Source of the DNA: Oopsacas minuta
Lineage: Eukaryota > Animalia > Porifera
Direction: 5' to 3'
Assembly: GCA_024704765.1 (NCBI GenBank)
Contig: JAKMXF010000310.1
Span: 62,001-126,000 of the forward strand
Length of the DNA stretch: 64,000 nucleotides
Positions 6,812 through 63,296 of this stretch are shown piece by piece (positions within the stretch are counted from its first letter, which is position 1; the number at the start of each line of letters is the position of its first letter). Under the pieces are notes generated by a model. It was not told the origin of the DNA, searched no databases, and saw only the letters and a program-made list of their open reading frames with translations. A program made the translations under genes and the position numbers.

Positions 6812-7544
6812 TTCAAACAGAATACTATTCTTTATATAAACTCGTTGTAAATGAATATTATCTAACTAGCTAGAACAGGTTTATAATTATGTGAATATTA
6901 ATATTTGGGTACTAAGGGTATAACGATTCTACTTATGATTCATGCATACACATATTATCGGAAATATATCACGAGATAAATAGCTCTCTACAAGTAGTAA
7001 TGGTATTCCAATACTCGTACATTTATTAGAGAAATCATTTCCAGAGTATGTACTTATTTGCAAATCAAGAATGAACATCATTCAAGTCTAATAGCAGAAT
7101 AGAAACACTCTTTTATATGTTGAATGTCTAAAAATCAATCGAAGCTACAGGCGTTTACTAATAATAAGGACGATAGTAACAATTACGATACATTAGTAGT
7201 ACAGCAAATTAATCATACTTGTCAACTTCCTGTTTTGGCGGACGGCTCACTTTTTGTGAAATACTCATATTATGTGGCTTATGTATATGTATATGTAGTA
7301 ATTGTTGTATCACTTCTTAGTTCGTACTTCAGAGTCTGTCGCGGCCGATAGACTAATTTGTCTAGTCTCGTTAATAAGCCCAATTTCCCGCTAAAATACA
7401 AGCGTCTATACGCTATTTGCTCTACTCTCATTGCACTCATATTTTTCTAACATAATTGATCTCAAGCAACCAGTGTTTTATCTATCCACCCCTCAGAGGG
7501 ATAAGCCCCCTTAAAATGAATTATAAAAGAAAACACTCTTGGAC

Positions 7545-8929
7545 CAGGCTTGCCGTGGATGAGAAAATCCCATCCATATCCATATCCATATCCATGTCAT
7601 TTTTGCGTGGATATCCATGAATACTTCAAAGACCTAGAACATCTTGTCTATAATGGCCATTCAAGGCTAGTAGTGACTATTATGTACAGGTAACCGCTAT
7701 GTACACTGCCTGGTCAAAAGTATTGGAACACTGTTTACAACTTGTGCACAAGTGGCATTAGATGAGAATATGTTGAAAGATTCTATGGATATTGCAGAAA
7801 GTAGAACAATAGCTTGTTATCATTCGTTTTACGATATATTAATGTTCAACAGTTTTTGAAATCATCTTTAGCTTATACAACTATGGTAGCATACCCTTTG
7901 TTTCAGGTATTAATTGTGGCAGGGTGTTCCAATACTTTTGGCCAGGCAGTGTAGATGTAGATTACTAATGAGAATCTATTCATATACTAAACGTTATATA
8001 CTGAAGCTCTAGATATTATGTAAACTGTCATTCATAAACTCTTCGATATCACTATCGTCTTCAAATGACAGGGACATGGGCTCATTGTTGATGACCATCG
8101 CAACTTCCTTTGGTTCGATTACAATTCCCAGCTTCTTGATTATTGTGATATACATTTTCTGGTATCTGATGTATACTAATTTCTTCATGACCGCCGGTGA
8201 CATTCTCTTTCTCATTTTTGGAAGTAGGTTGCCGGCCTGGCTGAACAACCTCTCCACGGCTGCAGAAGATATTGGTGCCGAGAAAATTATCTTTGCACAG
8301 GTGCGCAGACGTGTTAAGACACTGTACCGCCAAAACTGAGTTGGATCTTTCATTGGTACCCGGGTGTCTCTGAATTCTTGGAGCTCTATACCAAGAGTAG
8401 TAGCCTTTTGCCTTTTGGCTAGCAACACCAGAATTCACGAGTGAAAGGATGAATAGCAGTAGCAATAATTGCATCATAATTGCACAGTAATTGGTTACCT
8501 TTCACTAACATAGATCTTGAAAGAATTCAAAACTTTACATGAAATCTGGCACTATTCGTGACACAACAATTGCTGACATTACAATAATTGGCTACCTACA
8601 CGACTTCACCGATCTTACCGATAATAACTAATTTTCCATCATAATCGATTCTCAATTGGGAAATCAAATAACTTCATAATTTGATATTCATACGGTATGA
8701 AATAATAATCGTGTGGTGCTGGTTAGTTACATGTAATACACCAGCTTAGCTGATGGGGCTAATTGATGGGGCCGACAAAATTTAGATGGGGCGCTAGCCC
8801 CATCTAACCCCATGCTAGAGCCGCCACTGAACAACACCAGTAAGTGTACTTAGTAATATTGTTAATTTAATTATAACAGCATCCCTATTATTGAATATCC
8901 TATGGATATCCATATCCACGGCAAGCCTG
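7545..8929 (-). mobile_element. hAT deletion derivative retaining the C-terminal dimerization domain (8009-8428)
   Basis: TIR CAGGCTTGCCGTGGAT...ATCCACGGCAAGCCTG, subterminal CATATC repeats, and flanking direct repeat CTCTTGGAC (9 bp). The ORF has FW...AKIIFSAPISSAAVERLFSQAG...RKRMSP. Confidence 0.85.
7704..7951. mobile_element. Tc1-type MITE nested in the hAT element
   Basis: ~28-bp TIR CACTGCCTGG(T/C)CAAAAGTATTGGAACAC with TA on both sides. Confidence 0.85.
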
Positions 8930-60334: not shown

Positions 60335-63296
60335 TGTTGCAGTTTATGGACGTGCTTGGTGTGCACGCGTGCACACCAGTGTAATCGCGTGTACACGTGT
60401 GCATACTGGCGTATGGCGATGCCATAATAAAATGTTCTCTTCTGGTTCTTTACTAAATAATATAATTAGCGATCATTATTATCATTATTATCAACATTGT
60501 AATGTTTCACCATCCTTTGAAAAAGTATTTGAGTTGCTACCTAGAAATGAAAGGGAATATCAATAATTACACATTCTACATGGAAACATTGTGGGTCTCG
60601 AGCTCGAAGCACGGACTATATCCTTAATTCCATTGGTGACAAATGATGATCTTCAATTCTATAAAAGTACTCTACATATCCATCCAAACTCTACGTGTAT
60701 TCAGGTTAACTTGATAAAATCAGATAACTTGTACACATTTGTTGTATTTTATAATCACCATCAGTGCCTTACCAAATTGTTTCATAATATTCGTCCCGTT
60801 CATCCCAAACCAAACGACAACATCTATTCCTTTGTCACGATGGTTATCATTAAGGAATTATCCAAATCTATCTATTCTTCTCCTTCTATTGGGAGATATT
60901 GAATTGAACCCTGGTCCTACCTGAAGAGAAGAGTTCATGAAAATTCTTGACGAGAAGAAACTGGCTGATTCAGCCATTAATATATTCTCACCTGAAAAAA
61001 TAGAGCAAAAAATCTGCATCCTGAAATCACAGAAACCCACAGAAAAAAATGCAAGACAAAAGTGGCAAAGGGTTCAGAATAGATTTAAACTTGTTTCATA
61101 TCAAAGTGTTGAAACCCTATACCTTCGTGAAGCAAACAGACACAATTCCAAAAGAGTATTGGCGAGTAAAGAAATCTACGATGTCCTAGAAGAATTTCAC
61201 GTAAAAAATCACGGATATTCGGGAAGGATAAAATTGTATAAGAGAGTTACTCGATATTACTTTGGAGTTACTGAAGAACTGTGTGGTATTTATGTCAAAA
61301 TGTGTCCAACTTGCCATCTAAAAAGGGGAAGAAATCCATAAAGTCTGTAGTTACCAAGCCAATCGTATCAAGAAATTACCTGAGCAGAGGTAAAATTGAT
61401 CTCATAGATTTCAGAGATATGAATCTTGCTAAAAACATCACCAGATGGGGTCACACCCTATAAATACATTTTTGTCTACATTGACCATTTTACCAAAAAA
61501 ATAAACTTGGTAGAAAAACAGCAGAAAATTTTCGTGATATTTTAATTGAAATATTCTGCGATCAAGGCCCACCTCTAATATTACATTCTGATAATGGAGG
61601 AGAATTCTCAAATCGCCTTCTATTCGAAACTTTGCGAGATACTTGGCCCTCTACAAAAATTGTGTATGGCAAACCCTGACATCCTGAGTGTCAGGGGACA
61701 GTAAAGCTTGTGAATAGAGAAGTTAAAGACGGATTATTTGCCATGATGCATGATAACAATGATCAATGTTGGGTAAAGTATTTAAAGTGGGTAAAATTTA
61801 ACTACAACACAAGTTACCATACAACCATTCGAATGACGCCATTTGAAGCTGTATATGGCAGACCTCCATTCTTCTGACTCGCCACTCTTAATGTTCCTAA
61901 AGAACATTGGGGTGCGATTAATAACGAATACGATTTGAATAACTTTCAACAAACCTCTGTTGTTGATCCAATCTCAGCATCTGTTGATGAATTATCTGAA
62001 TAATCTAACTTGTCTGATAACGTAGTGCCTACATATACAGAGGAGTATCCTAATGAACCACAGTCTCCATATTTATCTAAGTTTCCCGCCTATTTCCGAT
62101 GATTATGAATTCTCAATATCAGATATAGTTCCACCTGGCACAATTCTCGATGATATAGAATATTCTACTAATGTTGAAACCCCAACATCAGGTATCTCAG
62201 TAATTCTGGAGAATCAAATTAGAGCAATTGAATCAGATAATTATATTCCTGAGACATAGTTTCCCATGAGACGACTATCTAGTAGTTCATCCATAGTGTC
62301 AAATATAAGTCCAACCAATTCAACTAACTTACTCTGTGCTGTATGTCAAAATGAAACAAGTAGAGTACACTCTTGCCCTGGGTGTAGTCGTTTCGTCCAC
62401 GTACCTTGCGGAATTCTACAAGGGGAAGAGGGATTTGGGAGTTCAGTGTGGTGTCAAGGTTGTTTTCTCAAAGAAAAGAGTACAATTACCATCATTTAAG
62501 AAAAGGAATAAAAAGAAATTAAGAAACACTATATGATCGTATGCTAAAGTCAAGTGGGAAAAATTCCAAACCAGCTGAAATCGGTGATACTGTGCTTATA
62601 CCCATTTCTCAACCTGATAAGATAGTTCGATTGGACCACGCAATCTTATGGGTCATATCATCGACGGACAGGATTCTGTTTATACTGTAGCTACATCACA
62701 TGGCACTATTTCCTCTGGCTATGCAAGGAATCAGTTGATGTTTGTCCATTCAGAATCAGTGCAAATGAGTCTTGCCATACTTCTATAGTTAGTCAAACGG
62801 AAGCAATGCAAAATGCTTCTCTGGGCCTCAGTGATTCAGCATGTAGATGTAAGCACTGTAAAACACTAAGGTACCCTTGCAAGAAATCAGGTAGAAGTTG
62901 CAACACTAAATGCCATAAGGGTCACACTTGTTTTAACAAGTTCGCATAACATACTACTAGCAGAGAGAATAGTCATTACGTATAACACAAGTCATTACTT
63001 AATATTTTTTAGAACTTTCAAATTGCCAAATCATTAGTTTATAATTAGAATAAAATAAAGATTTATTGCTCAGTCTCAAAAATTATTTTAAATTGGATAA
63101 TACAGACACTTCGCTACACGAGTAGTCAAGCAGATTATAAATAATTTAGTGTATTGGACGATTTGGAATTATTATGTGGTAATGGTGTATCGCTAATTAT
63201 ATTATTTAATAAACAACCAGAAGAGAACATTTTATTATGGCATGACCATGCACCAGTGTGCACACGTGCACACCAAGCACGTCCATAAACTGCACA
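60335..63296 (+). mobile_element. Ginger2/GIN-like (KRBA2/SCAND3-type integrase) DNA transposon, decayed
   Basis: TIRs over 100 bp starting TGT(T)GCAGTTTATGGACGTGCTTGGTGTGCAC. The coding region has an H2C2 Zn finger, YIDHFTK, HSDNGGEF, HPECQG, MTPFEAVYGRPP, a PHD-like finger and a terminal CxC cluster, with frameshifts and stops. No clean TSD. Confidence 0.85.
60862..60918 (+). other. 2A/StopGo-like ribosomal skipping motif
   Basis: PNLSILLLLLGDIELNPGP matches the D(V/I)ExNPG|P consensus with its upstream Leu-rich helix. Confidence 0.75.

What the first reader, a model, noticed from the sequence alone, without database searches (positions are those of the whole stretch)
60739..61341. 2A/StopGo motif in frame with a Ginger2-type DNA transposase
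Seen: inside the Ginger TIRs the frame reads ...LSILLLLLGDIELNPGP-T-TGA-R-E-E-F-M-K-I-L-D, so the motif and the integrase ORF (ATG 60937) share a frame and only one stop (60922-60924) separates them. The same element has another in-frame TGA where family homologs have Arg (GKP*HP, 61677-61679), so CGA>TGA decay is a plausible origin for the first stop. Known: D(V/I)ExNPG|P motifs cause ribosomal skipping in picornaviruses and in APE-type non-LTR retrotransposons of marine invertebrates, and 2A-like sequences are reported in sponge cellular proteins. I do not recall them in cut-and-paste DNA transposons. Inference: the active ancestor released its transposase from a hydrophobic leader by StopGo recoding.
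Basis: partly seen in the sequence, partly recalled or inferred. Interest (0 to 1): 0.85.

Follow-up and report, generated by a model that had tools for sequence, protein, structure and literature searches.

The report
2A skipping leader on sponge transposase
A decayed cut-and-paste DNA transposon in a glass sponge belongs to a whole clade of Ginger2-type elements whose transposase is encoded behind a virus-like 2A "ribosome-skipping" peptide, an arrangement so far described only for RNA viruses, retrotransposons and a few host genes.

Summary
At 60892-60918 the window reads GDIELNPGP, and one TGA (60922-60924) separates it, in frame, from the integrase-type transposase.

The element (60335-63296) is a dead, internally deleted Ginger2-type transposon.
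- Eleven other genomic copies keep the motif in frame. They read GGA or AGA where the window has TGA, so the stop is private (G>T, not CGA>TGA).
- In the family frame the reading frame is open from three ATGs about 125 codons upstream, through the 2A motif, into the transposase. The window copy has lost those ATGs in a 180-bp deletion.

The same layout (leader, L-rich helix, GD[IV]E[SL]NPGP, transposase) occurs in seven further element lineages.
- They lie on contigs of four other assemblies; host genes checked for two of these are close kin of this sponge.
- One copy looks uninterrupted. Another pair of insertions is 99.8% identical.
- With leader and 2A removed, all 2A-bearing transposases form one clade (98/94 support).
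- Sister lineages start M-S-R-S-E-F exactly where these read NPGP-T-x-x-E-E-F.

Ribosome skipping itself is untested, and no RNA data were available. I found no report of 2A in a DNA transposon. The scan's first readers flagged the same motif on other copies of this genome; those notes are unchecked.

The parts
60335..60473 (+). Left terminal inverted repeat. It begins TGTTGCAGT (TGTNR-type terminus).
   Evidence: Inverted repeats I1/I2. The terminus was defined by comparison with full-length copies and relatives.
60569..60570 (+). Junction of a 180-bp internal deletion private to this copy. It removed the three in-frame leader ATGs found in other copies (L072:796 onwards).
   Evidence: BLAST of the full-length copy C295 against the window. 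Alignment and family-frame translations.
60570..60858 (+). Remnant of the leader coding region. It is shifted out of the family frame twice by private 1-nt deletions.
60859..60918 (+). 2A-like peptide, positions -19 to +1 (PNLSILLLLLGDIELNPG|P). The core GDIELNPGP is 60892-60918 and the predicted skip lies between G (60913-60915) and P (60916-60918).
   Evidence: Conserved in 11 other copies and in relatives.
60922..60924 (+). Private TGA stop. Other copies have GGA (8) or AGA (3).
   Evidence: Alignment A1.
60919..61341 (+). Transposase N-terminal domain (T-*-REEF-MKILDE...) with an H2C2 zinc finger. H88/H92/C123/C126 of the ORF from 60937 correspond to 61198-61314.
   Evidence: Homologues found. 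N-terminal alignment.
61342..61880 (+). DDE integrase core, broken by frameshifts and by a TGA at 61677-61679. Putative catalytic D is 61398-61400, D 61590-61592 and E 61719-61721.
   Evidence: Translations. rve hit in the intact relative P0083.. The catalytic residues were read from the sequence by eye against the rve pattern.
62266..62499 (+). PHD-like zinc finger of the SCAND3 type.
   Evidence: Pfam Znf_SCAND3, E 1.2e-09. The same domain is found in relatives.
62541..62949 (+). C-terminal region: a broken segment (PAEIGDTVLIPISQPDK...) and a Cys-rich CxC tail (62806-62949).
   Evidence: ORFs. The same tail ends exon 2 of L085 and the mussel KRBA2-like protein P0119.
63186..63187 (+). Approximate junction of a second internal deletion (about 800 bp of 3' non-coding sequence present in full-length copies).
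63189..63296 (-). Right terminal inverted repeat. The terminal ...ACTGCAACA is reduced here to ...ACTGCACA.

Best explanation
The window holds a dead, twice-deleted copy of a Ginger2-type cut-and-paste DNA transposon. Full-length family members are about 4.06 kb.

In the living ancestor one ORF encoded three things in order. First came an N-terminal leader of about 125 codons in this family, ending in a leucine-rich helix. Then came a canonical 2A/StopGo motif (SGDIELNPG|P). Directly after it, with no start codon of its own needed, came the integrase-type transposase: N-terminal domain, H2C2 finger, DDE core, SCAND3-type PHD finger and CxC tail.

The most likely mechanism is this. The ribosome fails to form the Gly-Pro bond at NPG|P, releases the leader, and carries on. 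The result is a transposase that starts with Pro and is only one residue longer than the M-S-R-S-E-F N-terminus of relatives without 2A.

The leader-2A module was gained once at the base of a sponge-specific Ginger2 clade and kept while the transposases diverged.

Shown: the architecture, its frame, its conservation and its single origin. Inferred: that skipping occurs, and what the leader is for. The likeliest role is to set the dose or location of transposase, since unskipped product would carry a hydrophobic N-terminal extension.
For: 1. The motif and frame are as described in the window.

2. Eleven other copies in this genome carry the motif in register with the downstream transposase frame (indels within it are private to single copies), and none has the TGA.

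3. Each copy was translated as it stands in the family frame. The frame is open from three conserved ATGs about 125 codons before the GD, and every stop there is private to one copy or one near-identical pair. By my estimate, using a stop frequency of about 0.075 per codon in this AT-rich DNA, a chance run of about 145 open codons has probability near 1e-5.

4. Seven further lineages from four other assemblies have the same layout: P0005, P0002, P0083, P0084, P0088, P0090 and L088. L085 has matching termini (first 40 nt compared), TSD CATG, an ATG, a 40-aa leader, GDIELNPGP, a 59-nt phase-0 GTAAGT..TTTTAG intron and an open second exon. L082 and L083 are two insertions with 6 mismatches in 3457 bp and unrelated flanks.

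5. In the ML tree built with leader and 2A stripped, all 2A rows form one clade (UFBoot 98, SH-aLRT 94). Of the two rows of unknown state inside it, one proved to carry 2A and the other has a 5' deletion.

6. The N-terminal domain has diverged to about 42-45% identity, yet the core GD[IV]E[SL]NPGP is intact in 7 of 8 lineages.

7. The Met of sister lineages without 2A aligns with the residue right after NPGP.

8. Positions -19 to -10 hold 4-5 Leu in most lineages (2 in P0005), the pattern reported for active eukaryotic 2A-like peptides (bioRxiv 10.64898/2026.06.17.732966). LLKLSGDVESNPGP of P0083 differs at one residue from LLKLAGDVESNPGP. I identify the latter as the FMDV/ERAV 2A core from my own knowledge; one search shows only that this string occurs in papers on viral 2A reagents.

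9. Ginger2 features are present: TGTTG termini, 140-300-bp TIRs, 4-bp TSDs, H2C2, rve and Znf_SCAND3 (criteria from PMC2836005).
Against: - There is no experimental or transcript evidence. No RNA run was available, and the four runs that hold the element are assembled contigs of unrecorded type that show no splice or expression signal.
- In the published high-throughput assay many peptides with a perfect D[VI]ExNPGP core scored as non-skipping or as 'reduced protein'. Several LLLLSGD[IV]E[LS]NPGP-type peptides were among them. The motif alone therefore does not prove skipping.
- The codon-position test for selection on the leader gave nothing. It also gave nothing for the transposase N-terminus, so it lacks power.
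- All copies in this genome are broken.
- In the recently moved L082/L083 element I found no in-frame ATG upstream of the 2A.
- Leaders differ greatly in length (7 to about 130 aa) and in sequence, so no conserved leader protein is evident.
Confidence: 0.72

Rival explanations
1. The conserved module is functional but does not mainly work by clean StopGo separation. The leucine-rich 2A-like tract would act as a translational brake that lowers transposase abundance, or as a signal/anchor sequence that diverts unskipped protein away from the nucleus. Either way the effect is self-limitation of transposition.
For: Most lineages have 4-5 Leu at -19 to -10. The 2026 survey links 3-6 Leu there with reduced protein abundance, and it classed about 59-70% of retrotransposon 2A-like peptides as 'reduction'. 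Similar LLLLSGD[IV]E[LS]NPGP peptides were scored 'non-skipping, reduced'. Three leaders start with signal-peptide-like hydrophobic stretches: P0005, P0088 and the family here.
Against: This is not exclusive with skipping. The strict retention of the full NPGP and the exact abutment to the native N-terminus are what one expects if the released product matters. Other near-identical peptides in the same assay did skip.
Confidence: 0.17
2. The motif is a non-functional passenger, for example a captured 5' scrap of a LINE. The transposase is translated from the ATG at 60937 and the 2A tract lies in the 5' UTR or in an upstream ORF.
For: An ATG lies 5 codons after NPGPT in most copies of this family. 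All copies here are dead. No selection signal was seen in the codon-position test.
Against: That Met is not conserved in sister lineages. The residues between NPGP and it are homologous to the N-terminus of relatives without 2A. The motif is kept in frame across a clade whose flanking protein sequence has fallen to about 42-45% identity. The genome has no LINE with a canonical 2A motif, and the 5' region matches only this family. No RT or APE domain is near it.
Confidence: 0.07
3. The leader and 2A sit on a separate 5' exon, or are reached by some other route such as trans-splicing or non-AUG initiation. The continuous ORF from the upstream ATGs would then not be the real coding unit.
For: L082/L083 lack an in-frame ATG. 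Another 2A-like family in this genome ends NPGP-R directly at a GTATAT donor-like site. A nearer ATG (ACGATGG, 52 nt before GGA) is out of frame in nearly all copies.
Against: L085, L084 and L080 have ATG-initiated continuous ORFs through the 2A. In this family the frame is open from conserved ATGs.
Confidence: 0.04

Closest known systems
N-terminal 2A-like sequences of APE-type non-LTR retrotransposons (L1Tc/Ingi, CR1, L2, Rex1, Crack; Odon et al. 2013, PMC3708506)
   Same: A canonical D(V/I)ExNPGP motif with a Leu-rich upstream tract sits near the N-terminus of the single mobile-element ORF, in marine invertebrates. It is thought to release the enzyme from an upstream peptide.
   Different: The downstream protein here is a DDE integrase-type transposase of a TIR element with 4-bp TSDs. 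No RT or APE domain is present. In the literature I could search, eukaryotic 2A is described for retroelements and a few host genes only.
Ginger2/TDD DNA transposons and their domesticated derivatives KRBA2 and SCAND3 (Bao et al. 2010, PMC2836005; PMC3575427)
   Same: TGTNR termini, TIRs of 50-300 bp, 4-bp TSDs, and a transposase with an H2C2 finger and DDE core. The best named relatives are KRBA2-like proteins, and the Pfam Znf_SCAND3 finger is present.
   Different: The paper defining the family does not mention a leader or 2A motif upstream of the transposase in its described Ginger2 elements. The sister lineages found here also start with Met at that position.
Viral 2A peptides (FMDV/ERAV type)
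   Same: The core and upstream residues are nearly identical. P0083 has LLKLSGDVESNPGP; the string LLKLAGDVESNPGP occurs in papers on viral 2A reagents, and I identify it as the FMDV/ERAV 2A core from my own knowledge.
   Different: The viral peptide sits between capsid and replication proteins of an RNA-virus polyprotein. Here the motif is a short leader on a cellular DNA transposon. Origin by transfer or by convergence was not tested.
2A-like N-terminal sequences of host genes (sea-urchin NOD-like receptors, sponge ankyrin-like proteins)
   Same: An N-terminal hydrophobic 2A-like tract in marine invertebrates, sponges included. From memory, it has been proposed to act as a dual signal-sequence and skipping device (Roulston et al. 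2016).
   Different: Those are host genes. Here the carrier is a mobile element, and the module follows the element's phylogeny.

Membership tests
Ginger2/TDD DNA transposons | Terminal inverted repeats of about 50-300 bp | tested here: met
   About 140-bp arms in the window and in full-length copies. 299-bp arms in L083. In L085 and L086 the first 40 nt of each end, as far as compared, match.
Ginger2/TDD DNA transposons | Termini of the form 5'-TGTNR...YNACA-3' | tested here: met
   TGTTGCAGT...ACTGCAACA in this family and in all relatives examined. The criterion is from PMC2836005.
Ginger2/TDD DNA transposons | 4-bp target site duplication with a preference for AT-rich targets | tested here: met
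   TCTA (C99), TATA (C299), TAAA (C295), TACC (L081), TACA (L082, L083), CATG (L085) and TATA (L086). The window copy (AAAG/TTCT) and C188 show no TSD. Too few sites were seen to test the RTATAY preference.
Ginger2/TDD DNA transposons | Transposase with an H2C2 zinc finger and a DDE integrase core, and no RT or RNase H in the element | tested here: met
   H-x3-H-x30-C-x2-C read directly from the ORF 60937-61341. Integrase_H2C2 scores below cut-off. rve scores above cut-off in P0083. Only rve, H2C2 and Znf_SCAND3 domains were found within the 3.4-4.1-kb elements.
Ginger2/TDD DNA transposons | Lacks the YPYY and GPY/F motifs of Ginger1 and Gypsy integrases | tested here: inconclusive
   No such motif was seen by eye in P0083, P0090 or exon 2 of L085. 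No dedicated profile comparison was run.
Ginger2/TDD DNA transposons | Groups with known Ginger2 or KRBA2/SCAND3 integrases | tested here: inconclusive
   The best named hits are KRBA2-like (Mytilus) and a Littorina saxatilis integrase protein, at 34-39% identity. The SCAND3-type finger is present. Repbase Ginger2 references were not on hand for a joint tree.
2A/StopGo recoding peptides | C-terminal core D(V/I)ExNPG|P | tested here: met
   DIELNPGP at 60895-60918. D[IV]E[SL]NPGP in relatives.
2A/StopGo recoding peptides | Hydrophobic, Leu-rich helical tract at about -19 to -10 | tested here: met
   4-5 Leu in that stretch in most lineages, 2 in P0005. The feature is as described in bioRxiv 10.64898/2026.06.17.732966. 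Helicity was not computed.
2A/StopGo recoding peptides | Lies inside one continuous ORF, with coding sequence on both sides | tested here: met
   Met for the family frame and for L085, L084 and L080. It is not met in the window copy itself, which has the private TGA and has lost the ATGs.
2A/StopGo recoding peptides | Produces two separate polypeptides during translation | not testable with these tools
   This needs a reporter or proteomic assay. The peptide of copy C338 is listed in the library of the 2026 preprint, but its measured class is not in the stored part of the supplement.
APE-type non-LTR retrotransposon (LINE scrap hypothesis) | An APE or RT domain downstream of, or adjoining, the 2A leader | tested here: not met
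   The downstream protein is an rve integrase. No RT or APE hit was found. The 5' region matches only this TIR family in the genome.

The most novel reading that the evidence does not exclude
The 2A leader is not a quirk of one Ginger2 clade. It would be a portable expression module used by several superfamilies of DNA transposons in glass sponges; the scan's unchecked notes name Kolobok, MULE and RAG-like Transib elements of this same genome. In that case StopGo is a general strategy by which class II elements in this lineage free their transposase from whatever is translated upstream, for example host read-through or fusion transcripts, or meter its dose.
Probability: 0.3. Interest if true: 0.85.

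Novelty: new variant of a known kind. Interest (0 to 1): 0.7.

Why it matters
2A/StopGo recoding in cellular genomes has been tied to retrotransposons and a handful of host genes. A 2026 preprint still calls it sporadic and retroelement-associated.

Here a cut-and-paste DNA transposon clade carries the module. The module has a single origin and has been kept for a long time. The clade includes apparently uninterrupted and very recently moved members. This extends the known range of carriers of the recoding signal.

It also gives a natural comparison. Sister transposases with and without the leader differ at exactly one junction. That makes it possible to ask what a mobile element gains from an N-terminal 2A, whether release from upstream translation, dose control or targeting. 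The non-LTR examples have left this question open.

A practical point follows for annotation. Start codons of such transposases will be mis-called if the leader is ignored.

Tried and rejected
1. RNA evidence. The look-up of sequencing runs found no RNA run. The four runs that hold the element are contigs of unrecorded type, all from one sample. Laying them showed copy variants and deletion forms only. A few CT..AC joints in one run could not be interpreted.

2. The nearby ATG (ACGATGG, 52 nt before GGA), which is preceded by a TATAAAAG, looked like the start. It is +1 out of frame in nearly all copies and ends in a 20-codon ORF. The TATA-like string lies inside the open family frame. I rejected it as the start.

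3. A codon-position and synonymous/non-synonymous count between subfamilies showed no bias in the leader. It showed none in the bona fide transposase N-terminus either, so the test is uninformative.

4. Leaders and the window's leader ORF gave no Pfam hit.

5. LINE-scrap origin: rejected.

6. Other canonical 2A-like sites in this genome are GDVEVNPGP (C308 and C332 twice; a fourth related copy lies on C317) and GDIEINPGP (C323). About 1.5 kb downstream of these shows no clear coding sequence. What they belong to is unresolved.

7. The Transib-like element in this window has no NPGP in any frame.

8. The supplement of the 2026 preprint lists the family's peptide, but its activity class lies beyond the stored part.

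9. The joined, spliced protein of L085 was not sent to any search tool. Only the exon phases and the open frames were checked.
Full report
**What is in the window.** The frame through 60739-60924 ends ...NLSILLLLLGDIELNPGPT and is closed by TGA at 60922-60924. The next codons, R-E-E-F, and the ATG at 60937 are in the same frame. That ORF runs to 61341 and contains an H-x3-H-x30-C-x2-C finger with a weak Integrase_H2C2 hit. Downstream, in shifting frames, lie a DDE integrase core, a SCAND3-type PHD-like finger (Pfam E 1.2e-09) and a Cys-rich tail. All of this sits between inverted repeats of about 140 bp. The NPGP is the only one in any frame of the 64-kb window.

**The element and its family.** It holds at least a dozen copies. 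Full-length copies are about 4.06 kb (C295, C188, C99, C299).
- The window copy (60335-63296) has two private internal deletions, 180 bp near the 5' end and about 800 bp near the 3' end.
- Termini read TGTTGCAGT...ACTGCAACA.
- Several copies have 4-bp target duplications: TCTA, TATA, TAAA.
- Together with the H2C2 finger, DDE core and absence of any RT, these are the features that define Ginger2 elements in Bao et al. 2010 (PMC2836005).
- The window copy itself shows no recognisable duplication.

**Is the stop ancestral?** No. In an alignment of twelve copies the codon at 60922 is GGA in eight and AGA in the three most diverged. Only the window has TGA. The change is therefore G>T, not CGA>TGA. 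The second stop at 61677 replaces AGG in the five other copies matched there, again not CGA. All copies carry the 2A motif in register with the downstream frame. The diverged subfamilies use ATA and GGG where the main one uses ATT and GGT, which are silent differences in this frame.

**Where the ORF starts.**
- The nearest ATG is 52 nt before the GGA of GD. It is out of frame in almost every copy and opens only a 20-codon ORF.
- I translated each copy as it stands, along the columns shared by most copies. The 2A frame is then open for about 145 codons upstream and contains three conserved in-frame ATGs about 125, 112 and 109 codons before the GD.
- The stops seen there are each private to one copy or to the near-identical pair C295/C188.
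- Copy C99 shows this directly. L072:796-1209 reads ATG, one private stop, the 2A motif, then TGRE.
- Stops should occur at about 0.075 per codon in this AT-rich DNA. That figure is my estimate from base composition, not a tool result. On it, a chance run of this length has a probability near 1e-5.
- The window copy lost these ATGs in its 180-bp deletion.
- I did not build or print a consensus or a repaired frame.

**The same layout elsewhere.**
- A search of 1.8 billion representative proteins with the 134-aa N-terminal domain gave 82 hits. Most are short ORFs from long eukaryotic contigs in ENA assemblies.
- Those and follow-up searches revealed seven further lineages with a leader, a Leu-rich tract, GD[IV]E[SL]NPGP and then the transposase in frame: P0005, P0002 (motif decayed to KTGP), P0083, P0084, P0088, P0090 and the locus of P0092.
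- They come from four assemblies. A fifth holds a 5'-deleted relative.
- Host genes on two of these contigs are 83% (XAP5) and 93% (an MCM exon) identical to this genome's. The hosts of those two assemblies are therefore close kin, presumably also glass sponges.
- The elements share the TGTTGCAGT termini and 4-bp duplications: TACC, TACA, CATG, TATA.
- L085 looks uninterrupted. Its two ends match over the first 40 nt compared. It has an ATG, a 40-aa leader and GDIELNPGP. Exon 1 has 399 codons, followed by a 59-nt phase-0 GTAAGT...TTTTAG intron and an open exon 2 ending in the CxC tail.
- L082 and L083 are two insertions that differ at 6 of 3457 positions and have unrelated flanks, so they moved very recently. 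I found no in-frame ATG before their 2A.

**One origin, exact junction.**
- I stripped leader and 2A from the sequences and built a maximum-likelihood tree of 40 transposases. The broken sponge gene was entered as its pieces joined by X.
- All seven 2A-bearing rows fall in one clade with ultrafast bootstrap 98 and SH-aLRT 94.
- Two rows of then unknown state also fall in that clade. One (P0092) turned out to have LAGDVELNPGP-NQREEF just upstream. The other (P0001) is a copy whose 5' part is deleted.
- The sister group starts M-S-R-[SI]-E-F. In the alignment that Met falls on the residue right after NPGP of the 2A lineages, which read NPGP-T-x-x-E-E-F.
- The module was thus grafted onto the original start, and the released protein would be nearly native.
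- The Met at 60937 is not conserved in the other 2A lineages.
- Across the clade the N-terminal domain has fallen to about 42-45% identity while the 2A core has stayed intact in 7 of 8 lineages. This is the strongest argument that the motif is used.

**Mechanism and its limits.**
- The peptides have what active eukaryotic 2A-like sequences have: the D(V/I)ExNPGP core and, in most lineages, 4-5 leucines at -19 to -10 (bioRxiv 10.64898/2026.06.17.732966).
- P0083's LLKLSGDVESNPGP differs by one residue from LLKLAGDVESNPGP. I know that string as the FMDV/ERAV 2A core; one search shows only that it occurs in papers on viral 2A reagents.
- In that preprint's assay many peptides with a perfect core, including LLLLSGD[IV]E[LS]NPGP types, scored as non-skipping or as lowering protein yield. 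Skipping is therefore likely but not shown.
- The peptide of copy C338 is in that study's library, but its class is not in the stored part of the file. The paper's text does not mention DNA transposons.
- Leaders vary from 7 to about 130 residues and share only a basic patch, the hydrophobic tract and the 2A core. I therefore see no conserved leader protein.
- The purpose is open: release from upstream translation, dose control or diversion of unskipped protein.

**What is known.** Natural 2A in eukaryotes is described for these carriers:
- APE-type non-LTR retrotransposons (PMC3708506);
- LINE ORF1p and ORF2p, and one Ty3-like element;
- host genes such as NOD-like receptors, RapGEF and sponge ankyrin-like proteins.

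Full-text searches and four recent surveys gave no case in a DNA transposon. The finding is therefore a new combination of two known things, not a new kind of mechanism.

**Other notes of the scan.** First readers flagged the same motif on other copies of this family. They also flagged 2A-like leaders on Kolobok-, MULE- and RAG-like elements of this genome. The genome-wide census gives only ten canonical sites: six in this family, three GDVEVNPGP and one GDIEINPGP. The GDVEVNPGP family has a fourth related copy on C317. Its motif is followed by R and a GTATAT donor-like site.

Noticed in passing
G000 C308:317975, C332:1186736, C332:1254632 (loci L064, L067, L068); related copy at C317:128489: A second small repeat family carries ...LFLIICGDVEVNPGP followed by R and a GTATAT donor-like site. 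It looks like a 2A leader exon ending at an intron. About 1 kb downstream is shared by the four copies but shows no clear coding sequence.
   Followed up: partly
G000 C323:194122 (locus L066, minus strand 1425-1691): A single ATG-initiated ORF reads ...SVLLNFGDIEINPGPFTLNQ... The downstream context is unresolved.
   Followed up: partly
L072:537, L073:502, L076:543, L074:510 (about 165 bp inside the left end of full-length copies): The terminal motif TGTTGCAGTG is repeated once inside the element, preceded by AATGAATA-like sequence. It is a subterminal repeat of the transposase-binding end. The window copy lacks it.
   Followed up: no
L083:4023-4459, 7333-7784, 8460-8762; L082:7624-8317: Extra partial copies of the long TIR flank the 99.8%-identical elements, in tandem or nested solo-TIR arrangements. 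The outermost pair is the one bounded by the TACA duplication.
   Followed up: partly
L081:4172-5537: A 1.3-kb insertion with 238-nt inverted repeats, MITE-like, is nested in the 5' part of the P0002 element.
   Followed up: no
L081:1450-2995, L086:1520-3067, L084:9445-10609, L086:7655-8683: The related sponge contigs are dense in other DNA transposons: Tc5/pogo DDE_1, THAP9/P-element-like and DDE_3. None of these has a canonical 2A motif in the fetched stretches.
   Followed up: partly
L082:1-1774 (minus strand): A long ORF (more than 656 aa) with weak rve and Znf_SCAND3 hits. This is another Ginger2-like gene next to the 2A-bearing element and was not examined.
   Followed up: no
L072:1194-1269, 1462-1537, 2182-2241 (run X4 only): Contigs of one run skip 58-74 nt with CT..AC ends, which reads as GT..AG on the opposite strand. 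This could be antisense splicing or an assembly artefact. The run's type is unknown.
   Followed up: no
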